A stretch of 64,000 bases of DNA, taken from Podarcis muralis. Lineage: Eukaryota. The stretch is taken from NCBI RefSeq assembly GCF_964188315.1, contig NC_135661.1:15748001-15812000 (forward strand), given 5' to 3'. The notes below the pieces were generated by a model, which saw only the letters and a list, made by a program, of their open reading frames with translations, ran no database searches and was not told the DNA's origin. Position numbers and translations under genes: made by a program. Shown in pieces: positions 9,176 to 56,881 of this stretch (position 1 is the first letter of the stretch; each line of letters begins with the position of its first letter).

Positions 9176-18151
<8,976 letters not shown>

Positions 18152-24380: not shown

Positions 24381-24744
24381 AACAAATTCAGTAGGATAGT
24401 GAAGTAATCCAGATTACATAGGTGGCAAATGTGACATGAAGCCTGGCAACCTGAACCCCAGCGTAGCCACTTGCAGATGATCTCGAAGTGCCCGGAGACA
24501 GTCTGGTCGTGCAGCTAACACAGCAGTTTGACTTTGCCAACAAAAATGCATGTTCTTTCCATTTCCACAAGGGGGAACATGCTGGCTTTTACCAGCTTCC
24601 CTCCCAAAGTCCTTTCCACTTAGATCTGCTGGTCACCTTCTGGTCTACTGGTTCCAAGAAGAAAAGTGGTGTGCGTATGAGTGTGAGTGTGTGTGATGTT
24701 GCGAAGGAAAATTCCTAGTTGAGCGTGGAATGGAGATCCCGGGC

Positions 24745-25768
24745 ATGGCAGTGGCAACAGACATCCTGGCGATGGGACTGGGAGGGCTGGGCTTTTTGCT
24801 TCTCGTTCTGGGTGCCGGAGCAGATTGCTGGAGGGTAAGAAACAAATTAAGAGGACTTTAAAGCTGGGAAGGGGGCGGGGGGTGGGGAATCAAAAGCTGT
24901 GTTGTGCCAAATACCTGCCCTTTGGTTTCCTCGGTTGTTTTCCCTTTTTCCTGCCTCATCTGTGGGTAGGGATGCAAAAACCTGTCTGATTTCATTTTCC
25001 GAAGGCAAACTTCAAGTTCCGAAATGAGATGTTAAGTGCAATGTAGCCAACCTTTGCGCTTCTTCAGATTTTGCAGGGCTGTTCTCCTCCACGCAATGTG
25101 TAGATAGCATACACTCAGTGGCGTAGCGTGGGGGGTGCAGGAGGGCCGGCCGCACCGGGCGCAACATCTGGGGGGGGGCGCGCTCGCACTCGCAGCTCTC
25201 TGTCCCTACCTGGCTCACTCACTCTCTCTCACTGCAGTGCTGGCTGTGCGAATCCGAGCCGAGCCGCCGGGTCGCCGCCCACTGTGGAGGGGGGGTGTGC
25301 CAGGCGTGCGGTGCGGGTTAGGGGGCGCAAATCCACGGGTTAGGGGGCGCAAATTACTTGCCTTGCCCCAGGTGCTGACAACCCACGCTACGCCACTGCA
25401 TACACTGGATCGCAACCTGTAGAAGTCCCAAGCACTGACAATGTGCAATTAAAAATTAAAACAATACTGAACCATATAATAAAATTGTACTATTTGTAAT
25501 GACACAGAACTTGCATGTATGCTGAAATGCACTTGCATGTATGTCATTGGTGACACCCAACAGGATCTGATATCCTCTCATTAGTTTGGAGGAATGCTCC
25601 CTGGCTTAGGTGGGGATAAGTAATAAAAAGAGAACAGGAATAATGAGGGAAGTATTTGTAGTGGAGGGTAAGGAAGCCTAACAAAGTTCTGGTTTCCCCC
25701 ATGGTGATTACTTAGAAGCTTTTTATTTTTTTGGAAATCTCAAATGTTAAATTACTTCCCAAAAGAAA

Positions 25769-25815
<47 letters not shown>

Positions 25816-26358
25816 ACCCCTGCTTTGCTGGTACCTGAAACGCGCTTAATCAGTCCATTGGGCAATCTAGCACTGTGTGCTACAAGACGAAGACACAAAG
25901 TCCTTCTGGGAAATTCTTCAACTTGGATCAGCTTCTGAGCCATTCCCTCATCCCAGCATACAAAAAATTTCTTGGTCCCCCTTTCCCTCTCTGAAGAAAT
26001 TGAAAACTTGCTTGATAGAAGAACTGGGGGGTGCTTGGCTTGTGCTGTTGTCAAACCCAAGGCCTGGTTGCCATAGGAACGTTAAGCTCTGGGGAAAATA
26101 TACAGCAGCGGCGAGGGCCGGTGTACTCCTGGAAAGGTCAAACCTGCTTCTGGTGACTTTGATAAAGAGGGGCCAGTGCCCCCAGCTTTGCCCTCACTGG
26201 GTAAACACTGGCCACGGGAGCCATCACCGCTTCTTCCTTTCTTCGTTGCTGAACCCTCTCCGGGTGTTGGATGCACAGGAGCCTGCTCTGTCAAACATAT
26301 TTACTAATATTCATAAAAGTGAGCTGCCTGTGTGTGTGAAAGATACATACATACAGGC

Positions 26359-26401
<43 letters not shown>

Positions 26402-27093
26402 AGAGAGTGTGGGCTGTGAGGATGAGAGTGCCCGAGACACAGGACAGTCAGAACATGATAACGTAAGAGCCTACTGGATCTGGCCAATGGCCCATCTAGC
26501 CCAGCCTCCTGTCCTCACAATGGTCAGCAAGTTTCCTCAGAGGCCTAGGACCCTCGTACTTATGGGACCACCTCTCCGGTATGACCCACGGAGGACCTTA
26601 AGGTCCATAAATAGCAACACCCTAGCGGTCCCGGGCCCTAAGGAAGTCAGATTAGCCTCAACCAGAGCCAGGGCCTTTTCAACTCTGGCTCCAGCCTTGT
26701 GGAACGCTCTGTCTCATGAGACCAGGGCCCCGCAGGATCTGATTTCTTTCCGCAGGGCCTGTAAGACAGAGTTGTTCCGCCTGGCCTTTATCTTGGAATC
26801 AACTTGATCCCCTCTTTCCTTTTTCCTTTCTCCTTCTGTGATGGAACTCCTATTTGGGGACTTCCCTGGCTTTTCTGGCCCACGTAGGACCAGTCTGGAT
26901 AGTTGACCTTGGTGAAGATTTGACGTTTTCATCCCCCAAAAGTTTATGATTTGACTTTCTACTGAAATGAGGCTGCATTTTAATGTTGTACTTAATCTTG
27001 TTTTTAAGTTGCATTTTAATCAATTGTTTTTATACCTGGTGCTGTTAGCCGCCCTGAGCCTGGTCTTGGCTGGGGAGGGTGGGGTATCAATAA

Positions 27094-27140
<47 letters not shown>

Positions 27141-30100
27141 ATGGGAAACCTGTAAGCAGGACCTGCACACAAGAGCCCTCTCCCCCTCCTGTGGTTTCCA
27201 GACACTGGTATTCAGAAGCATTGCTGCCTCTGACCGTGGTGGCAGAATGCAGCCACCACGGATAGCAGCCATTGATCATCTTCTCCTCCAGGAGGTTCTC
27301 CAGTCCTCTTTGAAAGCTATCCAAGTATGGCGGCCACCACTGCCTCCTGCAGGAGCGAGTTCCACAGATTACGCACTGTGTGAAGAAGTTATTCTCAACT
27401 GTCCTGGTCTGTGGACCAGCTGAATGGGGTTCATGAACAGCCCGTGGTCTGCAGGCCACTGCTTAAGAACCTCTAATTAAAAAATTAGTTCTCAAAGTCT
27501 CTCTCCACCCAACTTCTGATGATTCCACCCTGCTCACCTTCCTTCTTTCTTACAACGAGTCCAGAGTGTAGTCCTGGGTGTCTTCATCTTCCTCCTTAGT
27601 CTCAGAGTTGAACTTGGGGGATGCGGGGGATGGGGACAAAACTAGAATGAGTTAGCTCTGCCTGCCATGCCCTCTGGCGCCACCTACTGTTGGCCTCCCT
27701 GCCTTCTGTCCTACCAGACTTCATGGGCACCAGCCTCTACTGACTACAATTCCCACCACCCCAGTTCATTAGCCATGCTTGGGGCTGAAGGGTGCTTCAG
27801 GGAGTCCAACCACATCTGGAGAGCCTCAGGTTCTTTCCATCCTCGAATAGGGGACAGATTCCCTCCTGCCACAATCCTGAGGCTCCAACCAATTGGAGGG
27901 GCAGGCAGCCTGGGTACAACTGAGTTAGTCCACCAACACCTTTCTACTCAACTCCATCTCACTTCACCTCACCTGTCTGTACAAAAATCCCGGCGGTGCC
28001 TCATAACTGCACAGAACATTTCTTCTCTCTTCTCTTCTCTAGCAAGATGCCAAGGACCCCCTGTCTTCGGTAGGGCTGAGTGCCCGGTGCCGGGGGTTGT
28101 GGAGTGAGTGTGTGTTTGATAACGTCGCTGACCTCTGGACCTGTGACATCCCGATCTCCTATCTCAGCGAGCATCCAGGTGAGGAAAATAAACCAGGTCC
28201 ACCTAGTTGGAGCAGGTTGCAAAGGTGGACAGGACACATGGGAAGCTGCCCTGTACCATTAGTCCATCTAGCTCAATAATACCAGCACTGGCTGGCACTG
28301 GTTCTCCAAAGTTTCAGACAGCAGTTTCCCCCCAGCCTCACCTGGAGTTTTTCGGGGATTGAACCTGGGATCAGAGGCTCCCAGTCAAAGGTGCAGTTCT
28401 AAGACTCTCAGCTCAGTTATTGCCAGTGGGTTTATTCCATAAGTCACAACAATGGCCAAACAGTGGTCAGGTTACAAGGTGTGTAGGTCACCAGTCTCCA
28501 GGCGGAAATTGCTAAATGTCCTGGAAAATCCAGCCATATGGCAACCCATGTTGGGAGTGAAGTTTCCCACGTTGGGCAAAAGATTCCTACATTGCAGGGG
28601 GTTGGACTAGATGGTCCTAGTGGTCTCTTCCAACTCAACAGTTCTATTATTCTAACCCAGAGGAGGTTTTTGAGAGAAGGGGGAGAGATTTTGTTGTTGT
28701 TGCTGCCATTATTAAATAAGTGAGCATCAGAAACCCCACAGGAAAATTTGCCTGCAGTCTACCATTAAACTCTGATCTCCTTTCAAGGTGCCTTCCGTGT
28801 TCTAAAGTCTTGTTCTCTCTCAATTCTTCACCCCATCCCACCAGCTGTTCTCGTGGTCACTCGGGTCTTGGTGATCCTCTCTGCCTTTCTGACTCTTTCT
28901 GCCATACCTCCCTTCATTGCTGGCATGAAATGTACCAAGCTAATGCGCAGCAGAGTCCTTCAGAAACAGAAGTTCTCCCTGGCTGCTGGCATCCTGTTCC
29001 TCTTAGGAGGTAAGCACAGCCTTGCTTTGTTTCAGGTTGGGGCAGAATAGTACTTGATCTAGACCTTGGCTTCCACAGTCTCGTTTGTAGGGTGCCTCCT
29101 TCCTCTTCCTTTTTACATTAGTCCTGCATTAAAGCCTTTAACAGCAACCAAAAAACCGAGGAACCCTCCAGATTCCCTTTTATTCCACATTCATGATGAT
29201 TTGTGCTCACAATGGTATTGGGGTGGTTAAACTTGATCCCGCATTTATGACTGTCTGCACTTGCAACTTTTTACAGTCTGAACAGCTGTAGTGGCGAAGC
29301 AGTACAGATTGTTCATGTTCAAAATAAGTAAATGTAAGTTGAAAGAGAGTAATATGTGGAAGTATAGGGTTGTCTCCAACTAAGACCTACTCGGAGCAGA
29401 TCCAGGGCTGGGTTTAGGTTTGATGAGGCCCTAAGCTACTGAAGGTAATGGGGCCCTTTATATGTCCAGCTGTCCTTTGTCAACAACAAATTGTCACTGT
29501 TTTTTGTGTTGAATATATGCTATATGGTAGTTTAAAGGTAAAGGTACCCCTGCCCGTACGGGCCAGTCTTGTCAGACTCTAGGGTTGTGCGCTCATCTCA
29601 CTCTAGAGGCCGGGAGCCAGCGCTGTCCGCAGACACTTCCGGGTCACGTGGCGAACCTACTCTGGTGAGCCAGAGCCGCACACGGAAATGCTGTTTACCT
29701 TCCCGCTAGTAAGCGGTCCCTATTTATCTACTTGCACCCGGGGGTGCTTTCGAACTGCTAGGTTGGCAGGCGCTGGGACCGAGCAGCGGGAGCGCACCCC
29801 GCCGCGGGGATTCGAACCGCCGACCATGCGATCGGCAAGCCCTAGGCGCTGAGGTTTTACCCACAGCGCCACCCGCGTCCCATATATGGTAGTTTATGGA
29901 CCTTTAAATTTTTGGGGGGCCCCAAGAGAGTGGGGCCCTAAGCTACAGCTTGTTTAGCTTATACGTAAATCTGGCACTGAGCAGACCCATTTAACTAAGC
30001 TGGTCATGCCCGTTATTCAGAGTAGGACAGAGTAGGATGATGTATTATTATTATTAAGGAAGCCACGGCAGCTGGAAACTCTAATGTGGAATGGTCTCCC

Positions 30101-31788
30101 TTTCACAGGGCTCTCTGGAGCGGTTGCTTCTCTGTGGTACGGCATCGACACCGTTCAGAAGTATAAGCTTGAGGTAAGTGAGGTACCCTAAAAGAACATA
30201 TGAACAGAAGAATCATAGAACTGTAGAGTTGGAAGGGACCACACGAGGGTCGTCTAGTCCAACCCCCTGCATTGCCAGAAACTTCTGCCCTACATGGGGC
30301 TCAAACCAACCATTCTGAGGTTAAGAGTCTTAAGCTCTACTGACTGAGCTATATGGCAGAAGCTGCCTCATGCCAAAGTCTGCTAGCCCAGTACTGTTGA
30401 CACAGACAGGCACCAGCTCTCTAGGAAGGGAGTCTTTCCCAGCCCAGTTTGGCGATGGCTAGGGACCTTCCTGCATGCAAAGTAGGGGCTCCACCACACA
30501 GTTGTGGCCATTCCCCAATGGGAATGGAGTTTAGTACAGAACCTATTGAAAGCCACATGGATTCTTTAGGGCGTTCCCCATCCACCTCCTGCCTTGACTG
30601 GCTGCAGTTCCCTAGGGTCTCAGCCCTTTCCCAGAAGTAGCTGAGATGTCAGGATTTGAACCTGGGGCTTTCTGTCCGCAAAGCCCTACAAGTGAGAATT
30701 TTTTTTATGGTAATCAACACATGCCTTTAAAATGTGCTGCTCCCACCTGGTTCGATGCCTGCAGAGTGTCCGGGATCACTCACCATCTCTTTTTTTGTAG
30801 TATTTTTGCTTTTCCATTTTCAAAATTTAAACATAATCTTATTATCCACATTGTTTTTTGCTCTTCTGAGCCAAATCAACTTCTCCCCCTCCTGCCTCAT
30901 GGCTTTGAAAGTTCACCCTTATATCATAGCATTCATACATCTTCCATTTTACGTATTTCTCATTCAACTTATCTCCACTTTCAAATAAATAAAAAAGGTA
31001 ATAACCATTATCATTACAAGATTTCTTACAACCCTACTAGTGTTGGTAAATGTTTACAATAATCCTTCAAATATTGTACAAATTTACTCCAGCCTTTTAG
31101 GAAAGCTTGATCACGCTGGTTTCAGATTTTCCCGGTCAGCTTTGCCAATTCCGCATAGTCCATCATTTTCATCTACCACTCTTCAATCGTTGGTACAGTG
31201 GTACCTTGGGTTACATATCCTTCAGGTTACAGACTCCGCTAACCCAGAAACAGTACCTCGGGTTAAGAACTTTGCTTCAGGATGAGAACAGAAATCATGC
31301 TCCGGCGGCGCGGCAGCAGCAGGAGGCCCCATTAGCTAAAGTGGTGCTTCAGGTTAAGAACAGTTTCAGGTTAAGAACGGACCTCCGGAACGAATTAAGT
31401 ACTTAACCAGAGGTACCACTGTACTTCTTGTTGCTTCCATTTTTGGGCTAAAAGAGTCCTTGCTGCAGTAGTAGCATACATGAACAATTTATGATCGCCC
31501 TTTGGTATTTCTTCACCTACTATACCTAATAAAAATGCTTCCAGGTTTTTTTTTTAAGAAAAGGGATCGCTCACCATCTCAGTTCTCTTTCAGGTCAGCT
31601 TGGGCATCCCTGGCGTGACTTACGAGCTTGGCTATTCCTATTGGATGGCTGCCGCGGGCGCCGCTTGCTCCACTTCCGGCGGTGCCTTACTGATCGCCGC
31701 CGACTGCCTCGATGCCCAGGCGCCGAAGAGAAAGCAGAACCTTCTCTGCAGCCCACTGACCTCCAAAGGGCCACAAACCTACCTATGA
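24745..31788 (+). CDS. Divergent claudin-16-like protein (gene A), complete, 216 aa (221 aa from in-frame ATG at 24730)
   Basis: Exons 24745-24834 (90 nt), 28043-28178 (136), 28845-29009 (165), 30109-30173 (65), 31594-31788 (195); total 651 nt, GT-AG, open frame. Protein: MAVATDILAMGLGGLGFLLLVLGAGADCWRQDAKDPLSSVGLSARCRGLWSECVFDNVADLWTCDIPISYLSEHPAVLVVTRVLVILSAFLTLSAIPPFIAGMKCTKLMRSRVLQKQKFSLAAGILFLLGGLSGAVASLWYGIDTVQKYKLEVSLGIPGVTYELGYSYWMAAAGAACSTSGGALLIAADCLDAQAPKRKQNLLCSPLTSKGPQTYL. Claudin W-GLW-C-C signature and four hydrophobic segments; DCW, CRGLW and EHP motifs as in CLDN16. Confidence 0.88.
25116..25398. mobile_element. hAT MITE (family H2)
   Basis: TIR cagtggcgtagcgtggg...cccacgctacgccactg; perfect 8-bp TSD catacact. 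Confidence 0.88.
25772..25813. repeat. (GT)n microsatellite
   Basis: Direct reading; also (CA)n at 45721-45761 and (GACA)n at 26357-26400. Confidence 0.95.
26545..27138 (+). mobile_element. L2 LINE 3' fragment
   Basis: ORF2 C-terminus (RTLRS...[21 protein letters not shown]...FRRACKTELFRLAF), 3' UTR and (TTA)n tail; related inverted copy at about 37860-38390. Confidence 0.8.
29403..29979. mobile_element. hAT MITE (family H1, inverted, internally deleted) with nested Sauria SINE
   Basis: TIR cagggctgggttta...taaatctggcactg; TSD agcagatc/agcagacc. Confidence 0.8.
29535..29881 (-). mobile_element. Sauria SINE (variant subfamily)
   Basis: 14-bp TSD tatatggtagttta at 29521-29534 and 29883-29896. 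Confidence 0.88.
31196..31421. mobile_element. Tigger-like MITE, main family
   Basis: TIRs and TA TSD; last intron of gene A. Confidence 0.9.
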
Positions 31789-33527: not shown

Positions 33528-36500
33528 TCACACGCGGGAAGCCATGGCATACATTTTGCAAGTGACTATGGGCGAATGGTGTGTCAGGCGCTGAGGTCTC
33601 CTGCGGGGGGCAGCACCTGCATTGGAAAGAAGAATGGAAGTCACAATATTTAGAAATAGATGTGGCCCTCTCTAGTGCTCTTGGAGAGTGGTGCATACAC
33701 AGTGGCGTATCGTGGGTTGCCTCTGCCCCCCTCTGCAAGGAAAGTATTGCCCCCCTTAGAAAATTATTGCGCCCCCTAAGTGGCATTTCCATATGGTGCT
33801 GATGTTGCTACTGGACGGAGCTTCAGCGCAGCGGCGGGACATGTGCGTGCACCTCCTTGGGCTGGGGCACCACCATCGTGGCAAGTCTCACCGTCTGCCC
33901 GCCTCCTCTGCTGGTGGGGAGCGCTGCACAGCCAAAGGATGCAAGGGCCCATCCTCTCCCAGCTCCTGTTTGGAGTGCTGTCCAGGTGAGGCAGGCAAAA
34001 GGTTGGGGCAAAAGCTGCAGAGGTACGCTTGTAAGAATTTTTGCACTTGGAGCAATTGCCCCGGTAGCCCCACCACCATGCTACACCACTGTGCATACAT
34101 TATCTTGTAACAGCCCTGCTAGGTTATCTTCACCCATGCGGGGGAAGCACCATGAGCAGGGTTTCCTGACATCACCTCCAAATTGTCACTGTTGGGTGGG
34201 AGGAATTCAGCTAGGGCCCATCATCCCTAGGCAGCATGGCTAGTAGCTAGTAGGGTGGTTGGAACCTGTAGCCCAAGAATATCTGGAGAATGTAAGAACA
34301 TGAGAGCCCTGAGGAATCAGGCCAAAGGCCCATCTAGTCCAGCATCCTGTGGCCAACCAGATGCCCATTAGGGGAAGCCCCCAAGCAGGATCTGAGCATG
34401 ACAGCAACCCTCCCCGCTTGTGGTTCCCGGCAATTGGTATTCCAAAGCATAATGTCTCCAACAATGGAGGCAGAACATAGTGATAACTGGCTAGTAGCCA
34501 TCGATAGGCTCCCTGAATTTGTCTAGTCCTTCTGTAAAGGTATCCGAGTTGGTGGCTCTCACTACCTCTTAGTATAGTGAGTTCCATAATTTAACCATGA
34601 ATTGTGTGAAGAAGTGCTTTTCTCTACCCTGAGTCCTCCTACGTTTGGTTTTCTTGGATAGCCCCAGGTCCTAGCATTATAGGGAGGCACAAGTTTCCTA
34701 CCCCTCCCTTAGGACAATTGGGGGATATCCACAGCCAGTGATAACCACTACGGTTTTTCCTCTTACACCACCTTTGCTGCTGTCTCTGAACTCTTAACTC
34801 TTCGTACTGACCTCCTGCGGTGGCAGAAAGGCAGCAAGTCAACACAATGGCTGCCACGAAGCATCCTGAGGATCCCACCATTCCCAGCCAGCAAGACCAT
34901 CCAAAGTCATAATGGACTCCCAAGAACACACTGTGCAAGACAAGAGTGGTCCTCTCCATATAGATATCGACAGCATACCAGACAGAGCCCACCAGTCCGA
35001 GGACACCTGGTGGGCCAAGAAAACACAATTATCTTAAGAAAGGCAGAGGCCATATGCTGGGCCACTACCCAAATCCCTCTGTATATGTTCATATATGTGG
35101 CAAAATTGCTCCATATCAACTGGCCAGGGGTTGCATACCATTTTGGGCCAGTGGGCATATTTGGGCTAGTCACAAAATGGCTTCCCTGAGGTGTGCAGCA
35201 TAACACAAAATGGCTGCTGGCTGTAGGCGTAGGGGCATAACACAAAATGGCTTCCATTGTGAGTCATGGCACAACACAGGCTGGCTGTCTTATCTAAAGG
35301 AGCAGAAAAGGAGACCTGGATGGGAAACAGTGTGGTCCTGCCCTGGAATCAGGGGCAACACATCCCGTTGTGTAATGATGAGGGATGAGAGAGGTTGTAC
35401 ATGAGACTCCACTTTCCACCTCAAGGCTTGCCTCAGTAGCTGTCCTGGTCGATAACAACAAAGCCAGACCCCAATGGAAAAGGCACTTACTTCCGACTCC
35501 CAGGACTAATCCTGACGAATAGCGCATCTTCAGCTTAACGTGCGGCTCGTCCTTGAGAAACTTGATGCAGTCGAGGCCCAGCGCCAGCAAGACTAACGCG
35601 AATCCCGAGAGGATGTCAGCTGTGATCAGCAATGCTCGAGTCACCACAATCTTCACTGAGAAGGGAGAGCAAAATACAAGGTAGTTGAAGGTCAGTCAGA
35701 GAAGCATCCTACTGGCCTGGCGTCCCCTGTCTGACTCTGTTGGGAGGAACCATGAAGGTCTGTATAATACTGAGCCAGGTGATTTGTCCACCTAGACCAT
35801 CAATGTCTACACCAGTGGGCAGTAGCTCTCCAGGATTTCTCTCAGCAGTCCCTCCCATTTCTCTACCCGGATTAAAATGGGACCTTCTGCATGCATATCA
35901 GGAGCTATAACCACTGAGTTAGATCCCTTTCCTAAAATTAAAGCAAGGTGCCAGATAAAGAGTTGATTTAAATAGAAACATAAGAAGCTAACATACTGAG
36001 TCACTGGTGCATCCAGCTCATGATTGATGATTGTCTACACTGACTGGAAGCAGCTATACAGGAGTTCAGGCAGGGGTCTCTCCTAGGATACTTGGAGATG
36101 CCAGGGATTGAACCAGCAACCTTCTGCATGCAGAGCAGATGTTTTACCACTAAGCTATGGCTCTTCCCCCCGGTTCTTCCCTGCTCAAGCTGGCACCTGA
36201 CCTGTCTTCTGATGACCTCTCTGCCTCTGCCTCTTCCTCTATCTCCTGCTTCCTTATTTACCTAATCTGGTGCCTCTGACCTCCGGCCCATCCAAGATTG
36301 TGCCTCCTGCCCCTGCCCCATTTTGCAGACCAGACCCTTCAAGAGTCACCATTTTCCAGGAACGGTTCCAGTTTACAGAAGCCGTCCCGGTTTCTGATTA
36401 GATCCCGGAATGTCCCACTTTTCCTTAGGAAGTCTCTACAGTGGTACCTCGGGTTAAGAACTTAATTCGTTCTGGAGGTCCGTTCTTAACCTGAAACTGT

Positions 36501-37860
36501 GCTTAACCTGAGATACCACTTTAGCTAATGGGGCCTCCAGTTGCTGCCACACCGCGGCCACGCGATTTCTGTTCTTATCCTGAAGCAAGGTTCTTAACCC
36601 GAGGTACTATTTCTGGGTTAGCGGAGTCTGTAACCTGAAGCGTCTGTAACCTGAAGCATCTGTAACCCGAGGTACCACTGTATTTTCATCGGATAAATGT
36701 TGGCGGGTCTGGAGTTACATAACCCCTGAGCCAAGGAGATAAGTACTGTAACTGTACAACTTTTAGAAGACATCTGTATAGGGAAGTTTAAAAAAAAACT
36801 TTTAATGTTTTATTATGTTTTTATATATGTTGGGAAGCCGCCCAGAGTGGCTGGGGCAACCCACTCAAATGGGCAGGGTATAAATAATAAAATTGTTGTT
36901 GTTGTTGTTGTTATATAGGACATCCCTATTGTTATTGGAGAAATGTTGGAGGGTATGATTTTGGCTGAAGCCTGTTCCAGGCTAGCACTACCCCCATCCA
37001 ACTCTAAAAATGTAGGGCAGTGTTATTACCCCTATACTGCCGAAAAACAAGCTGAGGCTGAGAGAGATACAGCTTGCCAAAGAGTATTTGCATTGCCACA
37101 GATCACGGGCCCATTATTATCATCACTATAGGCCACTGGTGGAGAACTGTACTGGGGCTCCCGATTTGACCCATGAGGTCATGCCTTGTGCAGTGCAAGC
37201 CCCAATGACCAGACAACGGCTGGGGCCTCAGTGCGCAGCTCTATTTAAAGAAAAGCTCCCCTGATGTCATTGTGATGTCAGATGATTGACAGGTCAAACT
37301 TGGCCCATGGAAGGGGGCAGGAGATAGAGATTTGGCCCACCAGTTCCGAATCCAGTTCTCCACCTACTGATGTAAGCCTATCCAACCTTACTTTAAAGAG
37401 GACTCTCCACTGGTCAACCCTCATCTCTGCATTTTTACTCCACCCCTGGAGGCCTGATCATCAGTTCCAGCCCTTTTAGCAATCTTAACACGCTCGGAAA
37501 CCCACCCCAGCACCTCCAACAATTGGGGCCAACTGTAGAAGGGGAGGGTCGCAATTGTGCAATGGCTGAGAAAGCTTGAATGCACCCGAAGATGCTTCAG
37601 CCCATCAGCTGTTGGAGACTTACAGGGATGCTCTGCTAAAATGGAGTCGTACTGGTCGCAGGTCCTGATGCCGTCTTGCATGTTGGTGACACACTCCCTC
37701 CACAGTCCTCGGCATTTGTGGCTGACCTGCAAAGAACATCATCGGATGTTTTGGGTGCAAAAAGGGGTGCTGCTTGGGGCTGAGACAAATAGAGAAAGGG
37801 ACCTCCACATTTCCAGGCTTTCGCTGTACCTTTAAGCTTACTGTTTTATCTCATTGGTTT

Positions 37861-37913
<53 letters not shown>

Positions 37914-39617
37914 TATTTATTTATACCCCGCCCTCCCCGGCCAAGACCGGGCTCAGGGCGGCTAACACCAAATATAAATACAGTAAAAACATTTTAAAAC
38001 AAAACAAAACCAAACAAACAGTTGATTAAAATATAAGTTAGAATACAGTTTAAAATGCAGCTTAAAATGCAGCCTCGTTTTAATGGCAGCCTATAGATCA
38101 AAGCCATAAGGGGAGAAAATGTCAAATATTCACCGGGGCCAACTATCCATGCTGGTCCTACGTGGGCCAGCAAAAAGAGCCGAGGGAAAATTTATATACA
38201 AAATCCCACATTAGGGGTTCCATCAAAATAAATAAATAAGAGCGGGGGGGGGGGGGGGTTAGACTGAGTTCAGCCCAAAGGCCAGGCGGAACAGCACTGT
38301 CTTGCAGGCCCTGTGGAAAGATGTCAAATCCCGCAGGGCCCTAGTCTTTAGTGACAGAGTGTTCCACCAGGCCGGGGCCAGAGCTGAAAAGGACTGGATG
38401 TTTTAGACTGAAACATCTTAGGTTGCATCCTATTTACAACTTCCTCCACCTACTCTGACTTCTCTTTTGGACCTCAAGATGAGAGGGCACCTTGGGTCCA
38501 TCCTCTGAGAACAAAGGAGCAAGCATGTCTGCCTTTGTATTGCCCAGATTAATTGGTTAGGATAGAACGAAAAAACGTCCCTATCCAAGTTATGTACTAC
38601 CTATAATAAACTACTTTTCTTACTCCACAAGCATCTCTGCATGTTGGATTGCAACAGGTAAAGTTGACTCTGCAACTGGATTCTCAAGCCATATGCTACT
38701 CACTTTGCACAGCAAAGAGCTCCAATAGGTAATTGGGCTCAGTTCCTGTTGTGATTAGGGACACAGGTGGCGCTGTGGTCTAAACCACCGAGCCTCTTGG
38801 GCTTGCTGATCAGAAGGTTGGCAGTTTGTATCTGTGTGATAGTGTGAGCTCCTGTTGCTCTGTCCCAGCTTAGCAGTTCAATGTAGCAGTTCAAAAGCAT
38901 ACCAGTACCTTTTCCTCACCTATTATTTATTATATTACTACTACTGCTGCAGCTACTACTATAACTAGTTGGTTGCCTAACACAGGACTGGTTTACAATC
39001 AAATTTCATCAAGTACCCCAGGAGAGATGAACACTTTAGCTGCCAAAATGTGCCCATTTTGCAGGCAGGGAGCCTGACAGTAGGTGGCGCCAGAGCCAAT
39101 GACAGAAAGAGCAAAGTGATTCCAGTTTCACCCCCATCCTCCTCCCTGTTGAGTTCTGCAAAAGGCAACACTGAGACTAAGGAGTGGGGAGCCAACAGGC
39201 AGCCCCACCCTCTGAACTTGTTGTAAGCAGGTAGAGATGTGGGAGAGGCTGGCTGAGGGCAGATTGAACTGCCTCCACTGGATGTAAAGGTTGGCCCCAG
39301 GTGGGCATGGCCAGGGAAAGCACTCCACAAGCAGAGAAGGGTGACCGCAACCTTTCTTATTATGCAGAGGCCCTGAGGGAAGGGGGATGCAATGATAGAT
39401 CTGGAGAATAGGGAATGGTTGCATATATAGGCACCAAGCTAGCTACCCCAGCGTAGTAGAACATGCTGGAGCTCAGCTACCTGTTCCTGTTCCTCGTCCT
39501 CACCTCCAAGCTGTCATCAGCATTAACCATCCAGCAGTCGGTCCATGTGGCCGCGACCAGGAAGAGGGTTGAAATGAGAGCGACGCAGAAGGACATCAGT
39601 TGCAAAGCCACCGCCAT
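33528..39617 (-). CDS. Claudin-16-like protein (gene B; probable CLDN16 paralogue), complete, 221 aa
   Basis: Exons 39617-39504 (114 nt), 37726-37624 (103), 35655-35491 (165), 35006-34812 (195), 33616-33528 (89); total 666 nt, GT-AG. Contains [15 protein letters not shown]|[34 protein letters not shown]|[52 protein letters not shown] and C-terminal KMYAMASRV, co-linear with human CLDN16 as recalled (KMYAVDTRV). Intron positions also match CLDN16. No symbol is given because paralogue versus orthologue cannot be settled from this window. Confidence 0.93.
33700..34091. mobile_element. hAT MITE (H2-related TIR)
   Basis: TIR cagtggcgta...tacaccactg; perfect 8-bp TSD tgcataca; about 82 nt from the last acceptor of gene B. 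Confidence 0.8.
36439..36680. mobile_element. Tigger-like MITE, main family
   Basis: TIRs and TA TSD. Confidence 0.9.
37860..38390 (-). mobile_element. L2 LINE 3' fragment
   Basis: Reverse-complement counterpart of the 26545-27138 fragment, with a (TAA)n tail at 37861-37912. Confidence 0.75.
38759..38905 (+). mobile_element. Sauria SINE 5' fragment
   Basis: gggacacaggtggcgctgtggtctaaacc head, degenerate and truncated. Confidence 0.75.
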
Positions 39618-48938: not shown

Positions 48939-51900
48939 TCAGACGTACTCTCTAGCCGTGGAAGGCTGCGACTGCCGGTAGTACTGCTGCCCTCTCTCTT
49001 CCGGTTTGGGGCAGGAGCAGGACAGGAAGGCTCCGCCCAGCATGGTCAGGCTGCCTGCTGACCACCCCACAAAGAGAGCAGGTCCAAATTCATACCTAAG
49101 GCCAAAAAAGAAAAAGAAAAAGAGTGTAGATTATAACAGCAGACATGTCGAGGTGTGCATCCTGATAAATCGGCTCCACCTCTTTGTGGGGACGTGTTGC
49201 GGGCGAGCCGCCAAGCCTCCCCCCCTACAGGGAACCAGGCAGAGGGCCTTCTCGGAAGTGGCACCCGCCCTGTGGAACGCCCTCCCACCAGATGTCAAAG
49301 AGAAAAACAACTACCAGACTTTTAGAAGACATCTGAAGGGAAGATTTTCATGTTTAATAGGTTATTGTATTTTAGTGCTCTGTTGGAAGCCGCCCAGAGT
49401 GGCTGGGGAAACCCAGCCAGATGGGTGGGGTATAAATAATAATAATACTTATTAATTATTATGGGGGGCGGGACTGTGTCCTGCCTTACGCTGGGGAGGC
49501 CCGGCCACGCCAGTTAGCCAAGTGGCCAATCAGGCAGGTTAGGGGGCGTGGTCAGGGTCAATTTAAACCACAGTGCAATGCTGAATCGCCCCTTTTCAGG
49601 CTCACGCCGTGAATCTCTTGCCCTCCCACTCTTTGTTCAGGTTGCATCATTGATCTTGCCATGGTCTTCGGTTGGCCGCCGTTGAGGGGCCTGGTAGCAC
49701 TTTTTCCACTTGGCAAATTGGCACTGGCAACTTGGTTTCCGCCTACCTCATAGCAATCGTCACAACTTTGTAAGGTTAGGCGGTTAGGCACTGGAATAGC
49801 AATGTGTGGGGGAGGGGAGGTGCGGCCATCACCTGCCCCCTCCGTGCTCAAGGGTATTCCGTTAAAGCATGGGTAGGCAAACTAAGGCCTGGGGGCTGGA
49901 TCCGGTCCAACTGCCTTCTAAATCCCGGACAGTCTGAGAATCAGCGTGTTTTTACATTTGTAGAATGTGTCCCTTTATTTAAAATGCATCTCTGGGTTAT
50001 TTGTGGGGCCTGCCTGGTGTTTTTACATGAGTAGAATATGTGCTTTTATTTAAAATGCATCTCTGGGTTATTTGTGGGGCATAGGAATTTGTTGATTATT
50101 TTTTTTCAAAATATAGTCCGGCTCCCCACAAGGTCTGAGGGACAGTGGACCGGCCGCCTGCTGAAAAAAGTTTGCTGACCCCTGTGTTAAAGGAATCTAG
50201 GGGTGTGGATTTCGTCTGAAGCCCGGGGAGGGGCTAGGGCCATGCCACAACCCCAGTGAGAACCCAGGGGATGCTCGGGTCAATCCACATTGGCGGGGCT
50301 CCCTCTACTGGTGGTTTACCCTTAAAAATCTCCCTGCAAGGCGGGCAGGAGTCAGATACAGTCTGTTGATGCCAATGCCTAAGCCAATACCTCTCACATT
50401 CTGTAATCAATAATGTTGTAGCCTAAATTTTTGCCCATTAACATTAACCTAAATTCTGTGTCCTTGTGTCTTTATTCTCCTTGGGGTAGCTTGGGGCTTC
50501 GACATGCAAACTCAGTTGCCTCAAGATGGCAAAAAATAAAGGGCCACAGTGGAGTGGCAGAAGAACAGAACACCTGCTTTGCATGCAGGAGGTGCTGGGA
50601 TCATTCCTTGGCACCCCCAGGTAGGGCTAGGCAACTACCCTAGTCTGGAACCCTGGAGAGCTACTGCCAGTCTCTGTAGGCAATACTGAGCTACATGGTG
50701 TGACAATCAGCTTCCTGTTTCAGGAATTTATGGGAGGGATTGAAGTGCATATCAGAACTTGTGTTTGCACCATTATAGTGGGTTAACGTGCTGCGTTGCT
50801 CTGGTGCATTGAATCAGAGGTGATTTCCAATGAGATCTCAGACAGCGAGGACATGGTGCCGGCCCCATAGAAATGGGTTTGTGAGTGTGTATCGAAATTA
50901 GCCTGGTGTGCAAAGGTAACGGTCTCTACGGTCTCCCACAGCTGGCGTGTGGCCCCTCAGAAGGTTGCCCAGAAGGCAAAGTGGCCCTTGGACTGAAAAA
51001 CGTTCCCCACCTGTGATCGAGGGGGGATGCTGTACACAACTGGGACAATCTCTCTGGGTTTTGAAAGGCACACATCCGCTGCTGTGATTTCTGGTTTGAA
51101 AAGAGGTGTAAGAAAGCGCACTCTGGGTTGGCACAGGCCCTGCTCTCACCTGGCGTTAACCGGCGTGCTGGGGTTGAAAAACTCGTACGTCACCCGTGCC
51201 GCGTACCATGAAACAGCCGTCATGGTGCACAGACCTGGGAACAGAGGAGACAACACAAATGATCCAGTTAATAGGAATTGGGGGCCAAACGACACATTAC
51301 ACTCATGTTCCAGGATTGGGAGTTATCATGAGAACATTCTGCTGAATCAAACGAGGGACCCACCTAGTGCAGCATTCTCTCAGCTTTCTGGGATGTTCTA
51401 ATGTTGTGAGAGAGGGAGAAAAGCTTTTCTCTGTCTGCTTTCTCCATGGCATGCATGGGGGGGGGGGCGCGGAGGAGAAATACAAGCAAGCCCAGGAACC
51501 CGTTCTTAAAAGTAGTAAATGAACAGCTTGAATGGAAAATGTTTGAGGGGAGGAGCAGCCAAACAGAGATGGTCTTTTAGCAGAGCCAATGAGAATGGGC
51601 CCTGCAGTCCTATATGTCCTATGGCTGCTGCTGTCTTGTGTCACATGTCTCCAATTCCCCCAATATTCAGTGGTCGATGTACTTCATAAGGCTTATCTGC
51701 AGGCACAGGCCCAAGGAGAAACTGCTATGTTGCCTGACCTACTGCCCTTACTAAACCTCGGAGCAAGCTGATATATCTAGCTTTTTCCTTTACTATCTTG
51801 AACACATGCTTGTGTTCCCCAAATTTAAACACAAGTATAACAAGAACCTTGATATGCATTTCATGCTCCAAACCAGGATGTGCCCAGAACAGTTGCACCC

Positions 51901-54900
51901 GATAACCCTCTTGTTGAGGAATAATCCACCTTGTTAACTTGTTTCCACAAAGTTGTATTTGTTCTGAGCCGCTTCGAGTCTACCGAATAAAGCAAGGGTG
52001 GAGTGTATTTTTCAACCTTCTCTTCTGGGCAACCTTCTGGGGGCTACGTGCCAGTGGTGGGCAGCAGGCCAGAAGCAAAAGTGGGTGGAGCAATAAATAT
52101 CACTCTCGTCTTACTGTATAATGGCAATGGAAGACTGTCGTCAGGCTGCAGTTCCCTTGGCCACCAAGAGGTGTCACTGTCCACTTCAGTGTAGTGAGTG
52201 GTGGCAGATGGGCAGCCTAGGGAATCCGTGGGGTGACAGCAAGGGCACTCTGCAGCAGCCACCCAGCTCCACTGGCTCCCCCACCTGCCGGCTTCAAGGG
52301 CCTTGCCCTCAGGATTCAGATAACCAGGCTGACCACTGGACTGCTGGTCACCTACCCCCTCTGCATCCCGCCTTGGAATCTGTTGCTATTGATTGACAGG
52401 AAGAATGACAGGAAGAGCAGACCAGAGAGGTGGAAGATGCCCAGAAGCATAGTCTGGCCTTGAATACTGCAGGAGCAGCAGCATGGAGAAGGCACTCAGC
52501 AGTGGCAGCCAACCAGCCTCCAGATCTGCAGCACAATCCAGTTTCCACGTGTTGTCATACACACATGTCTGTCCTCCATCCAGGGATTCTCAGAGTTTGA
52601 GGACACAACCATGCCAGGCAATAACACCCAAAGAGAGTACAAATAGAGCAGGCAAAGGACCAGGGAGAGTCCTCAGGTCAGAGGAAGATGCCCAGAGGGC
52701 CACATCTGGCACCCAGGCTGGGACAAGGCCCACGGGGTATATATTAGCCTTCAGCTTACTTACCTGCTAGTAGGAAGAAGACACCCCCCAACACAGCGAT
52801 CCAGCTTTTCACCACGGGATTCTCGTCTCCAACTTTGGTGCATTTCATTCCGATCACGCTGACAACAGCCCCGACGAAACCCAGGAGGATGGAGACCACC
52901 ATAAGTGCCCGGGAAGTCTGGATATGAACTGGAAAACAAGAAAGTGCCTGTCTTTGGGGTGTCCAAGGGGGGAAAGAGGCAGCTGCAATTGCAGGGTTAA
53001 GTTGCTTAAAATGGCCCTTAGGGTTGCCATATGTTGAAGAGCAAAAAAGAGGTCACATTTGCTGACTTCTACTTTTAACTATGGATCACTACACAGTGGG
53101 TGGCGCTGCAGTCTAAACCACTGAGCCTCTTGGGCTTGCTGATCGGAAGGTTGGCAGTTTGAATCCCCGCGACCAAGTGAACTCACGTGGCTCTGTCCCT
53201 GCTCCTGCCAACCTAGCAGTTTGAAAGCACACCAGTGCAAGTAGATAAATAGGTACCGCTCCGGCGGGAAGGTAAATGGCATTTCTGTGTGCTCTGGCTT
53301 CCGTCACAGTGTTCAGTTGTGCCAGAAGCGGTTTAGTCATGTTGGCCACATGACCCGGAAAGCTGTCTGGCCTGAAAGAGAGATGAGCACCGCACTCCAC
53401 TGTCGCCTTTGACTGGACTTAACCTTCCAGGGATTCTTTACCTTTTTACCTCTACCCATGAAATAGAGGATGTGACCTGGAAAAAGAGGACATATGGCAA
53501 CACTTCCAGGAACTAATTTTTAACAAAGGCAGTTTATTTTATTATTTTATTATTTATTTCCAATTAAGAGTGCTGTCAGGGGTTCAGGAGCAGAGGCAAG
53601 GGCAAGGGAGGAAACAGAGAGCGAAGGGGAGGAGGCAGAAGAAAGGATGAGTGATGACGACGACCCGAGATCTCCGAGTCTCTCCAGTGAGTCGGAGGAT
53701 TCACAGAAAGGAGCACCAGTGGCCAAGGCAAGGGGGGAGTTTAGGGGGGCACCCCAGGGAGATAGAGCCAGAGGGGAATCAGAGGAGAGCAGTTGGAGAT
53801 CGGGTCCAGCGTCACCGCCAGAGAGCAGGGAAGAGGAAAGGAGCCAGGGGGCAAGCGCTGGCAGCTCACAGCAGGAGGGAGGGCACGAGTCAGGGGTGGC
53901 CACACCTCCATCTGGGAGCGAAGAAACGGTTAGACGGAAGGTGGAAGGTTGGGCGCGCGCGCCAAGTTCAAATGCACAGGAAGGAGGCGCAGTAGGCAGC
54001 CCGGAAAGAGAGCCGGGTCCTAAAGCCCGGCGCAAGGAGACAGGAGAGTCCGGGGGGTCAGCGTCCGAAGAATCCCGGAAGGAAGAGACCCAGGGGGGCA
54101 GAGGGACCCAGAGAAGAACAGTCAGGCGGAAAAGGTGGAGCAGGGCTAGGATATTAAGTTGGTGTACGAGGGGCGGAGATTCAGACGGAGCTTCGCCGAT
54201 CTAGCTACTAGACGTAGGGTTGCACGCAGCAGCTTGAGAATGGAAACTGTAACTCAATAAAGACTTTTACTTAATGACCGTTGGCTGGCGTGATCCTCTG
54301 TGAGCTAGGATCCTGAAGCAACCCTGACAAGTGCCATGTTCCAACCTCTGACGTATGGGCAAAGGGCTCCCTTACCTGTTAAAGGCCTCTTTGACACATT
54401 GGCTAAAGGCTCTTTACAGCTTTACCCAATGACTCTCGCCCATTGACATATAGGCAAAGGGCTCCTTTAACAGTTATATGCAACACTTATGAAAAAGCTC
54501 TGACACAGAGGCAAAGAGCTATTTAACCTGGGCTCTACACCTTGAATCAGATCCACTGGCACACAGGCCAAAGGCTCCATCAGCTCTGAAAGGGGTCTCT
54601 GAGGCAGAGGCTAACAGACTCTCACAAACTGACACATGGGCGCCATTTTGAATCCATCTGTCAGGCCCAAACTCTGCCAATTTGGATGCCTCTGAAGATT
54701 TCCTAATTCCAGTTTGGTGTGATGGGCTCCCGATAGCAAGGAATGGGCTTTGGTCTCTGTTTCTTAGATTCCTGGGGCAACACCGTGTGTACTGCCAGCT
54801 AGCTAGCTAGCTAAATAAATAAATAAATAATAGTTAATTCTCAGCAAGCAGTTGCACCCATGCAAGAATGTCACACACGCACAGTTACTGTTTTAGATCT

Positions 54901-56839: not shown

Positions 56840-56881
<42 letters not shown>

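What the first reader, a model, noticed from the sequence alone, without database searches (positions are those of the whole stretch)
24730..31788. Gene A is a mosaic claudin: CLDN16-type ECS1 with classic-claudin features elsewhere
Seen, CLDN16-like traits: the extra cysteine pair (DCW and CRGLW) in addition to the canonical two, 10 residues between the canonical cysteines (9 in CLDN19), TCD..S.L.EHP..LVVTR.L.I, and an acidic ECS1. Seen, classic traits: 18 residues from W to GLW (as in CLDN19; 15 in gene B), GMKCTK after TM2 (gene B has GLDCIK) and a C-terminal TYL rather than TRV/SRV. It also lacks the CC doublet after TM4. Inference: an anciently diverged, probably uncharacterised claudin lineage, possibly basal to CLDN16; the extra cysteines could form a second ECS1 disulfide.
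Basis: partly seen in the sequence, partly recalled or inferred. Interest (0 to 1): 0.78.

Follow-up and report, generated by a model that had tools for sequence, protein, structure and literature searches.

The report
Ancient unnamed claudin-16-like paralogue
Gene A is an intact, transcribed tight-junction (claudin) gene from an old, still unnamed sister lineage of claudin-16, kept next to claudin-19 by cartilaginous fishes, bony fishes, amphibians and most reptiles; I did not find it in an ostrich, a python or any bird or mammal protein set, and because databases already predict it, it is an under-described family member, not a new kind of gene.

Summary
Gene A (+ strand, 5 GT-AG exons, 24730-31788, 221 aa) is a real claudin. 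It passes Pfam PF00822, its AlphaFold model matches solved claudins, and spliced RNA contigs confirm two exon junctions.

My model is 100% identical to the NCBI prediction 'claudin-16-like [Podarcis muralis]', so the gene is already in databases under a placeholder name.

It is not a lacertid copy of gene B, with which it shares only 32% identity. It belongs to a well-supported orthogroup (98/98) found in a sawshark, chimaera, sturgeon, bichir, teleosts, amphibians, turtles, crocodilians and lizards.
- All five species checked have identical intron positions.
- The tail-to-tail position beside gene B, next to CLDN19, is conserved in chimaera, frog, turtle and gecko.
- No bird or mammal orthologue was found, and the ostrich and python loci have no trace of it.

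The four-cysteine ECS1 is shared by all CLDN16-like lineages, including mammalian CLDN16.

With CLDN19 as outgroup, A plus a third lineage 'C' is sister to (lamprey cldn16 + CLDN16 + B). An origin from B is not rejected (AU p = 0.22).

Function is inferred only: probably a cation-selective tight-junction subunit. The proposed second disulfide could not be tested. An earlier scan note on this same window already described the cluster.

The parts
24730..24834 (+). Gene A exon 1: start codon, TM1, ends ...DCWR, phase-0 donor GTAAGA
   Evidence: The same exon end (DCWR|Q) is found in gecko, turtle, Xenopus and Sparus. A spliced RNA contig carries 175 nt upstream of exon 2, off the laid stretch and not checked against exon 1.
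28043..28178 (+). Gene A exon 2: ECS1 core (QDAKD...SSVGLS.RCRGLWSEC...TCD...SYLSEHP), the most conserved part of the protein
   Evidence: RNA joint 28174>28841 (GT..AG, cut +4) in runs X1 and X3. Exhaustive HMMER search with this exon gave 73-89% identical hits in tegu, newt, bowfin, frog, alligator and lungfish.
28845..29009 (+). Gene A exon 3 (165 nt, phase 1 to 1): TM2, GMKCTK loop, first half of TM3. Same size and phases as CLDN19 exon 2 and gene B exon 3.
   Evidence: RNA joints on both sides.
30109..30173 (+). Gene A exon 4 (65 nt): rest of TM3 and start of ECS2, ends ...KYKLE
   Evidence: RNA joint 29007>30107 (GT..AG, cut +2) in X1 and X3 contigs, plus 2 raw reads each in X23 and X24. 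This intron position is shared only with lineage C.
31594..31788 (+). Gene A exon 5: rest of ECS2 (IPGVTYELGYSYW), TM4, cytoplasmic tail ending TYL, stop codon
   Evidence: RNA contigs begin at 31592, the acceptor plus two bases that also match the exon-4 end.
33528..39617 (-). Neighbour gene B (5 exons, 221 aa, ...SRV), CLDN16-type 'B' lineage, tail-to-tail with gene A
   Evidence: 217 of 221 residues identical to Podarcis raffonei 'claudin-16-like'. Tree.
48939..57585 (-). Neighbour CLDN19 (4 exons, 209 aa, ...EYV)
   Evidence: Exon 1 is 97% identical to Zootoca vivipara claudin-19.

Best explanation
Gene A is a functional, transcribed claudin gene. It is the Podarcis muralis member of an ancient jawed-vertebrate orthogroup that so far carries only the automatic name 'claudin-16-like'.

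The orthogroup lies in a conserved three-gene cluster, CLDN19 > B > < A. Together with a further lineage C it is most likely the sister of the clade holding lamprey cldn16, true CLDN16 and gene B.

Its 'mosaic' look has a simple explanation:
- It shares the derived CLDN16-type ECS1 (four cysteines, TCD, EHP..LVVTR).
- It keeps ancestral classic-claudin features (GMKC after TM2, a -Y[VLI] tail) that the CLDN16/B branch later replaced with GLDC and -[TS]RV.

Inferred mechanism (not shown):
- A four-helix tight-junction protein whose acidic ECS1 lines a paracellular cation-selective pore. ECS1 has net charge -3, an invariant Asp directly after the second canonical Cys, and 3 of the 5 acidic residues that I recall as setting cation selectivity in CLDN16.
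- It is probably anchored to ZO scaffolds through its TY[LIV] end.
- It probably works in heteromers with the neighbouring CLDN19 and/or B in ion-transporting epithelia.
For: Gene and expression:
- Intact 5-exon ORF, identical to the NCBI Podarcis muralis protein P0026.
- Spliced RNA contigs and reads support the exon 2-3 and exon 3-4 joints.

Claudin identity:
- PF00822 at 57.2 bits.
- AlphaFold model with pLDDT 82 and pTM 0.77, showing 4 long helices and 5 strands.
- Best fold matches are claudin-3, -4, -15, -19 and -9, with TM-score about 0.8 by target.
- Sequence matches to the same solved claudins.

Orthogroup:
- 72 hits from shark to lizard, none from birds or mammals.
- A clade 98/98, A+C 95/85, lamprey + CLDN16 + B 96/82.
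- Identical intron positions in lizard, gecko, turtle, frog and teleost, two of them shared only with C.

Synteny:
- A and B lie tail-to-tail in gecko, Xenopus and turtle.
- The full CLDN19-B-A cluster is present in Callorhinchus.

Constraint:
- dN/dS is 0.15-0.22 among reptiles.
- The ECS1 segment is at least 95% conserved across 49 orthologues, with W-to-GLW = 18 and C-to-C = 10 in every orthologue where the motif could be matched (40 of 49). TY[LIV] ends 45 of the 49; two salamander models end IYL and two end differently.

Pore residues:
- The alignment to gorilla CLDN16 maps D104>K39, D105>D40, E119>E57, D126>A64 and E140>E78.
- That these five residues set cation selectivity is from my memory of Hou et al. 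2005, not checked here.
Against: - No functional data exist for any member of the orthogroup.
- The tissue of expression is unknown: run metadata are coded, and depth is only about 4-7.
- Two of the five recalled CLDN16 selectivity residues are changed, one to Lys.
- ECS1 is the least confident part of the model, with pLDDT 50-75.
- The deep position of A+C may be inflated by long-branch attraction to the CLDN19 outgroup, and the AU test does not reject A+C+B as one clade (p = 0.218).
- Only CLDN19 served as outgroup; other claudin families were not sampled.
Confidence: 0.85

Rival explanations
1. Gene A, together with lineage C, arose by tandem duplication from the B lineage after B and true CLDN16 had separated, but before the split of cartilaginous and bony fishes. 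It then evolved fast, so its basal position in the tree is a long-branch artefact.
For: - A lies directly beside B in every cluster examined.
- A and C have long stem branches: 0.87 plus 1.13 and 2.02.
- Forcing A+C+B into one clade costs only 4.1 lnL, AU p = 0.218.
Against: - The best tree separates them, with 95/85 and 96/82 support.
- A and C keep the -Y[VLI] tail, and A keeps GMKC, as in CLDN19. B, CLDN16 and lamprey all share GLDC and -RV. This rival would therefore need reversals.
- Intron 1 and intron 4 positions differ between A/C and B.
Confidence: 0.25
2. Gene A is a recent, lacertid-only, fast-evolving copy of gene B.
For: It is adjacent to B, has the same protein length (221 aa), and shares the CLDN16-type ECS1 motifs.
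Against: - A is only 32% identical to B, but 82% to Rhineura, about 75% to geckos, about 65% to turtle and gharial, and about 50% to frogs.
- Orthologues occupy the same position in gecko, turtle, frog and chimaera.
- The A clade has 98/98 support.
Confidence: 0.01
3. Gene A is a decaying or non-functional claudin relic, and its transcription is only noise.
For: - RNA depth is low.
- The gene has been lost in an ostrich and a python and was not found in any bird or mammal protein set.
- It evolves faster than B and CLDN16 (branch lengths).
Against: - The ORF and splice sites are intact in more than 45 species spanning all jawed vertebrates.
- dN/dS is 0.15-0.22.
- Transcripts are correctly spliced.
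- The extracellular segment is nearly invariant.
Confidence: 0.02
4. Gene A is a functional claudin, but a barrier-forming or regulatory subunit rather than a cation pore. For example, it could modulate CLDN19/B channels.
For: - D104 and D126 of CLDN16 are replaced by Lys and Ala.
- The invariant first half of ECS1 (QDAKD..SSVGLS) is unlike any characterised pore claudin and looks like an interaction surface.
- It has classic-type GMKC and Y-hydrophobic tail features.
Against: - ECS1 remains net acidic at -3.
- The Asp after the second canonical Cys is invariant. From memory, this position is the pore-selectivity site in CLDN2.
- Its closest relatives by sequence are channel-type claudins (CLDN16 family).
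Confidence: 0.3

Closest known systems
Claudin-16 (paracellin-1), mammalian CLDN16 sensu stricto
   Same: - Four-cysteine ECS1 (DCW, [KR]C[RK]GLW.EC, TCD), 10 residues between the canonical cysteines, S.L.EHP..LVVTR before TM2, acidic ECS1, and an extra intron within the ECS1-coding region.
- Presumably the same kind of job: a tight-junction cation-pore subunit that partners CLDN19.
   Different: - Only 32% identity and a separate clade.
- Lies beside CLDN19. Salamander, caecilian and sawfish CLDN16 lie on different contigs from their CLDN19 and/or A genes.
- 3-residue longer first ECS1 loop.
- GMKC instead of GLDC, TYL instead of TRV, no CC after TM4.
- The ECS1 intron is displaced by 8-11 residues, there is an intron in ECS2, and none after TM4.
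Gene B lineage ('claudin-16-like' or 'claudin-16' of birds, reptiles, frogs, basal fishes and chimaera)
   Same: Physical neighbour, tail-to-tail, in one conserved cluster with CLDN19. Shares the same CLDN16-type ECS1 signature.
   Different: B is slow-evolving and nearly CLDN16-like (GLDC, -SRV, CC, the CLDN16 exon plan). A is 32% identical to it and has a different exon plan. Birds and a python keep B but have no A.
Lineage C ('claudin-16-like' of geckos, Anolis, Pogona and a frog; P0014, P0019, P0015, P0085, P0086)
   Same: Sister clade of A (95/85). Shares both A-specific intron positions (after DCW+1 and in ECS2 before VSL.IPG), a -TYV tail and the IPG...E.GYS.W ECS2 motif.
   Different: C has 15, not 18, residues from W to GLW. 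It has lost the Cys after TM2 and the W of the WY motif, and gets no Pfam hit at E < 0.01. In Eublepharis it lies 5.3 Mb away from A/B.
Claudin-19 and other classic claudins
   Same: PF00822 fold, W-GLW-C-C signature, 18-residue W-to-GLW spacing, GMKCTK after TM2, Y-hydrophobic C-terminus, and the 165-nt phase 1-1 TM2/TM3 exon.
   Different: Classic claudins lack the extra cysteine pair and the TCD and EHP..LVVTR motifs. They have 9 rather than 10 residues between the cysteines, and exon 1 is not split. The ECS2 intron lies 9 codons further on and is in phase 2.

Membership tests
Claudin family (Pfam PF00822 PMP22_Claudin) | Profile match above the curated threshold | tested here: met
   P0026, which equals gene A, scores 57.2 bits against a cut-off of 26.7, E = 2.6e-15, covering residues 22-189.
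Claudin family (Pfam PF00822 PMP22_Claudin) | Four transmembrane helices with a five-stranded extracellular sheet; fold similar to solved claudins | tested here: met
   The AlphaFold model (pLDDT 82) has helices 5-31, 81-107, 118-159 and 171-199, with strands in ECS1 and ECS2. Foldseek's top hits are claudin-3, -4, -15, -19 and -9, with TM-score by target 0.75-0.83.
Claudin family (Pfam PF00822 PMP22_Claudin) | W-GLW-C-C signature in the first extracellular segment | tested here: met
   W34, G53-L54-W55, C58 and C69 are present, and are invariant or nearly so across 46 aligned proteins.
Claudin family (Pfam PF00822 PMP22_Claudin) | Localises to tight junctions, forms strands, and binds ZO PDZ domains through its C-terminus | not testable with these tools
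   Only the sequence motif is seen. TY[LIV] ends 45 of 49 orthologues.
CLDN16 orthogroup sensu stricto (the mammalian gene) | Groups with mammalian CLDN16 in a phylogeny | tested here: not met
   The A clade (98/98) is separate from the CLDN16 clade (99/99) and from the B clade (100/98).
CLDN16 orthogroup sensu stricto (the mammalian gene) | CLDN16 exon plan: ECS1 intron after ...DDSLE, no intron in ECS2, intron after TM4 | tested here: not met
   A has its ECS1 intron after DCWR, an intron in ECS2 after KYKLE, and none after TM4. The CLDN16-type plan was read from gene B and the ostrich B gene. The plan of mammalian CLDN16 itself is from memory.
CLDN16 orthogroup sensu stricto (the mammalian gene) | C-terminal T/S-R-V PDZ motif and GLDC after TM2 | tested here: not met
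   A has ...TYL and GMKC. Every CLDN16, B and lamprey row displayed has GL[DE] at the GLDC site (one eel row lacks the Cys); gene B and ostrich B end -SRV.
CLDN16-like superfamily (CLDN16 + B + A + C) | Four-cysteine ECS1 (DCW and C.GLW.EC...TCD) and the EHP/..LVVTR junction to TM2 | tested here: met
   C51, C58, C69, T68 and D70 are invariant and C33 is at least 90% conserved across 46 proteins of all four lineages. These features are absent from CLDN19.
Lineage A orthogroup (placeholder 'claudin-16-like') | Monophyly with orthologues from other vertebrate classes | tested here: met
   Support is 98/98, and the branching broadly follows the species tree, from shark through fishes and amphibians to reptiles.
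Lineage A orthogroup (placeholder 'claudin-16-like') | Conserved position: tail-to-tail with B, in the CLDN19 cluster | tested here: met
   - Seen in the window and in gecko L001, Xenopus L003/L004, turtle L007 and Callorhinchus L009.
- In Sparus, A lies directly beside a cldn19-like gene.
Lineage A orthogroup (placeholder 'claudin-16-like') | Signature: QDAKD..SSVGLS.RCRGLWSEC, W-to-GLW = 18, IPG[VI]T[YF]E ECS2 motif, TY[LIV] end, and a five-exon plan with identical intron positions | tested here: met

The most novel reading that the evidence does not exclude
A (with C) is a lineage of CLDN16-like claudins that predates the split from lampreys. Together with B and CLDN19 it forms a three-gene paracellular cation-channel module in the ion-transporting epithelia of cold-blooded vertebrates.

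Its invariant extra ECS1 loop (QDAKD..SSVGLS) would give a distinct pairing or selectivity property. The module would have been simplified independently in mammals, birds and snakes. In many teleosts, A rather than CLDN16 or B may be the only CLDN16-like partner of cldn19.
Probability: 0.25. Interest if true: 0.6.

Novelty: new member of a known kind. Interest (0 to 1): 0.42.

Why it matters
CLDN16 and CLDN19 form the renal paracellular Mg2+/Ca2+ pathway, and their loss causes human FHHNC (familial hypomagnesaemia with hypercalciuria and nephrocalcinosis). This background is established knowledge, not tested here.

This work suggests that the single mammalian CLDN16 is the remnant of a larger ancestral set of at least four CLDN16-like lineages (CLDN16, B, A, C). 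Three of them share one uninformative database name.

Lineage A is conserved from chimaera to lizards beside CLDN19, under purifying selection, with an almost invariant extracellular loop. That gives comparative physiologists a concrete, untested candidate for paracellular divalent-cation handling in fishes, amphibians and reptiles.

It also gives structural biologists natural variants of the CLDN16-type ECS1. Finally, it flags a nomenclature and orthology problem: what is called 'claudin-16' in birds and reptiles appears to be lineage B, not the mammalian gene.

Tried and rejected
- Pfam on single exons of A gave nothing because they are too short. It worked once the identical full-length database protein P0026 was found.
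- I did not type the spliced protein into any tool. Full-length relatives were reached through an exhaustive HMMER search with exon 2.
- Alignments of a full-length protein with exon fragments were badly aligned (A2, A3). A2 still pulled in B and CLDN16 proteins. A3 was abandoned.
- CLDN19 outgroups were obtained with a stop-free ORF reference plus the 'region' option. That search returned almost only CLDN19, so no other claudin families are in the tree.
- The Polypterus protein P0066 was not on record for a locus look-up.
- Six literature searches found no description of the lineage. The only 'claudin-16-like' mention is a row in an eel differential-expression table, probably lineage B.
- A scan of the window for YBX1 cold-shock motifs found nothing. 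The upstream neighbour is instead an MFS-transporter-like gene, whose large ORFs gave no Pfam hit.
- The C33-C51 disulfide could not be measured because the structure tool returns no coordinates.
- The AU test did not reject an origin from B.
- The tissue of the RNA runs is coded, so there is no expression site.
- The exon 4-5 joint is not among the listed joints. It is supported only by contigs that start at the acceptor and by the conserved exon plan.
Full report
**Anatomy**

The window is vertebrate DNA without N runs. On the + strand between 24730 and 31788 lie five exons: 24730-24834, 28043-28178, 28845-29009, 30109-30173 and 31594-31788. All are flanked by GT-AG, with intron phases 0/1/1/0. 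Together they give a 666-nt ORF of 221 aa.

Two further claudin genes lie on the - strand.
- Gene B runs from 39617 to 33528, has five exons and encodes 221 aa ending ...ASRV.
- A four-exon CLDN19 runs from 57585 to about 48939 and encodes 209 aa ending ...EYV. Its first exon is 97% identical to Zootoca vivipara claudin-19.

A and B are convergent, with their 3' ends 1.7 kb apart.

**The observation**

- Cysteines at 33, 51, 58 and 69.
- 18 residues from W34 to GLW. CLDN19 also has 18, and B has 15 counted from W29.
- 10 residues between the canonical cysteines (CLDN19 has 9).
- ECS1 net charge of -3.
- GMKCTK after TM2, where B has GLDCIK.
- A ...TYL end, and no CC doublet after TM4.

One small slip: three residues, not two, separate TCD from S.

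**Is it a real, working gene?**

Sequence and structure say it is a claudin.
- Single exons were too short for Pfam.
- An exhaustive HMMER search with exon 2 alone found 73-89% identical stretches in proteins of tegu, newt, bowfin, frog, alligator and lungfish.
- A profile of these retrieved 72 proteins. One of them, P0026 'claudin-16-like [Podarcis muralis]', is 100% identical to my spliced model over all 221 residues. The window is therefore P. muralis or a near-identical genome, and NCBI already predicts this protein.
- P0026 passes PF00822 at 57.2 bits against a cut-off of 26.7 and matches solved claudin-4, -3, -19, -9, -15 and -18 over its full length.
- The AlphaFold model has pLDDT 82 and pTM 0.77, with four long helices and five strands. 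It superposes on claudin-3, -4, -15, -19 and -9 with TM-score about 0.8 by target.

RNA evidence shows it is transcribed and spliced.
- Logan contigs of two probable RNA runs carry a 528-nt spliced contig. It holds 175 nt of upstream sequence, then exon 2, exon 3 and the start of exon 4.
- Its joints fall at 28178/28845 and 29009/30109.
- Two raw RNA-seq runs each show two reads across the exon 3-4 joint.
- Other contigs begin exactly at the exon-5 acceptor.
- Depth is low and the tissue is unknown.

Purifying selection is evident. dN/dS is 0.15 between Podarcis and gecko, 0.22 between Podarcis and turtle, and 0.21 between gecko and turtle. dS is about 1, so these values are rough.

**What lineage is it?**

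A is only 32% identical to gene B's P. raffonei orthologue, which matches my B model at 217 of 221 residues, and 32% to gorilla CLDN16. Its identity to its own orthologues is much higher:

| Compared with | Identity to gene A |
|---|---|
| Rhineura | 82% |
| Geckos, skink, monitor | about 75% |
| Turtles and gharial | 64-68% |
| Amphibians | 47-58% |
| Ray-finned fishes | 39-50% |
| Sawshark | 47% |

I built an IQ-TREE (LG+C20) tree of 74 proteins with 13 CLDN19 sequences as outgroup. It gives four strongly supported clades.

| Clade | Support | Members sampled |
|---|---|---|
| A | 98/98 | Shark, sturgeon, bichir, teleosts, amphibians, turtle, gharial, squamates |
| C | 100/99 | Squamates and a frog |
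| CLDN16 sensu stricto | 99/99 | Sharks and rays, Huso, salamanders, caecilians, mammals |
| B | 100/98 | Chimaera, sturgeon, basal teleosts, frogs, turtles, squamates (including the window's gene B), crocodilians, birds |

A+C (95/85) is sister to lamprey cldn16 + CLDN16 + B (96/82). The stems of A and C are long and the outgroup is distant. Forcing A+C+B together costs only 4.1 lnL (AU p = 0.218). 'Basal to CLDN16' is therefore the best reading, but it is not proven.

**Rare genomic characters agree with the tree**

The A exon plan is identical in lizard, gecko, turtle, Xenopus and Sparus: DCWR|Q, EHP(1), GG(1)..E|V.
- Lineage C shares both A-specific intron positions.
- B, in the window and in ostrich, has its ECS1 intron 8-11 residues further on (..DDSLE|VS), no ECS2 intron, and an intron after TM4.
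- The 165-nt phase 1-1 exon for TM2/TM3 is common to A, B and CLDN19.
- The ECS2 intron of A is not at the CLDN19 position. It lies 9 codons upstream and is phase 0 rather than phase 2.

**Synteny and presence or absence**

| Species (locus) | Arrangement found |
|---|---|
| Leopard gecko (L001) | A and B tail-to-tail |
| Xenopus laevis (L003/L004) | A and B tail-to-tail |
| Turtle (L007) | A and B tail-to-tail |
| Callorhinchus (L009) | Complete CLDN19(+), B(+), A(-) cluster |
| Sparus (L005) | A followed directly by a convergent cldn19-like gene |
| Ostrich (L006) | CLDN19, B, 5.8 kb with no A-like tblastn hit, then a cold-shock-domain gene (YBX1 by my inference) |
| Python Liasis (L008) | CLDN19, B, 5.6 kb with no A-like hit, then the MFS gene that flanks A in gecko |

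The Callorhinchus result dates the cluster to the common ancestor of jawed vertebrates. A and CLDN19 also share contigs in alligator, Mixophyes, Nanorana, Gekko, Hyperolius, Lissotriton and Phrynocephalus, where the locus tags are 009823 and 009825.

No bird, snake or mammal appears among the 72 A-type proteins. I did not inspect any mammalian locus, so absence from mammals rests on the protein databases alone.

**What the 'mosaic' means**

Across 49 A orthologues, several features are shared:
- The W-to-GLW spacing of 18 and the C-to-C spacing of 10, in every orthologue where the motif could be matched (40 of 49).
- The segment DAKD..SSVGLS.RCRGLWSEC..D....TCD..SY, conserved at 95% or more.
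- The TY[LIV] end, in 45 of the 49.
- GM.C in tetrapods and basal fishes.

The extra cysteine pair, TCD and the EHP..LVVTR junction are shared by all four CLDN16-like clades and by lamprey, and are absent from CLDN19. They define the superfamily, not gene A.

GMKC and the Y-hydrophobic tail are shared with CLDN19, and the tail also with C. B, CLDN16 and lamprey instead share GLDC and -RV.

The simplest reading is this: A combines the derived CLDN16-type ECS1 with ancestral classic features that the CLDN16/B branch later changed. The three extra ECS1 residues are equally parsimonious as retained or re-gained.

**Likely mechanism (inference)**

As a claudin with the full signature and fold, A should sit in tight junctions, with ECS1 lining the paracellular space.
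- Its ECS1 is net acidic.
- Asp70, directly after the second canonical Cys, is invariant. From memory, this is the position of the selectivity Asp of CLDN2.
- Of the five acidic CLDN16 residues that I recall from Hou et al. 2005 as setting cation selectivity (D104, D105, E119, D126, E140), the alignment shows three kept (D40, E57, E78) and two changed (K39, A64).

I therefore rate a cation-selective pore subunit, probably heteromeric with CLDN19 and/or B, as the most likely function. A barrier or modulatory role is the main rival.

The C33-C51 disulfide is plausible because both cysteines are co-conserved in all CLDN16-like proteins. It could not be measured, because no coordinates are returned.

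**Novelty**

The gene and its orthologues are already predicted in RefSeq and UniProt, but only under the name 'claudin-16-like', which lineages A, B and C all share.
- Many database models of A are truncated or mis-spliced.
- Six full-text searches found no paper that describes the lineage. The library lacks most subscription journals, including the main claudin-phylogeny papers, so prior description cannot be excluded.

I class it as a new, undescribed member of a known kind, of moderate interest. An earlier first-stage note on this same window (s1-193661) had already pointed to the CLDN16-like x2 + CLDN19 cluster.

Noticed in passing
window 33528-39617 (- strand), gene B: Gene B is not in the clade of mammalian CLDN16. 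It falls in a separate 'B' clade (100/98) with birds, crocodilians, turtles, frogs, basal fishes and chimaera. No sauropsid fell in the CLDN16 sensu stricto clade among the proteins sampled. 'Claudin-16' of birds and reptiles may therefore be a paralogue of the human gene.
   Followed up: partly
L002:10001-20808 (Eublepharis) and proteins P0014, P0015, P0019, P0085, P0086: A third CLDN16-like lineage 'C' exists in squamates and a frog. It shares A's two special intron positions and a -TYV end. It has lost the Cys after TM2 and the W of WY, and gets no Pfam hit at E < 0.01. In Eublepharis it lies 5.3 Mb from A/B on the same chromosome. It was not seen in this window.
   Followed up: partly
L006:12129-17965 (ostrich) and L008:14457-20063 (python Liasis): The place where gene A should lie, after gene B, holds no A-like sequence by tblastn. 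This suggests independent losses in birds and in this snake.
   Followed up: yes
L005:20815-25007 (Sparus aurata): In this percomorph, the A orthologue is followed directly by a convergent cldn19-like gene with no B between. B-clade teleost hits came only from eels and bony-tongues. A may therefore be the only CLDN16-like neighbour of cldn19 in many teleosts.
   Followed up: partly
window about 9385-18184 (- strand): Long open frames look like exons of a membrane transporter. The gene flanking A in gecko (752 aa) and lying after B in python (757 aa) is annotated with MFS_1/MFS_2 domains. The window ORFs themselves gave no Pfam hit.
   Followed up: partly
window 29450-30050 and 31050-31450 (introns 3 and 4 of gene A); also 26450-27250 and 28450-28650: Blocks with very high RNA and contig depth, many variants and chimeric joints look like dispersed repeats or transposon fragments inside the introns, not part of gene A.
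   Followed up: no
proteins P0001, P0002, P0003, P0005, P0006, P0007: Database models of A orthologues in tegu, Pleurodeles, bowfin, alligator, lungfish and Aldrovandia are truncated or run into intron sequence. Exon 4 and/or exon 5 is missing.
   Followed up: no
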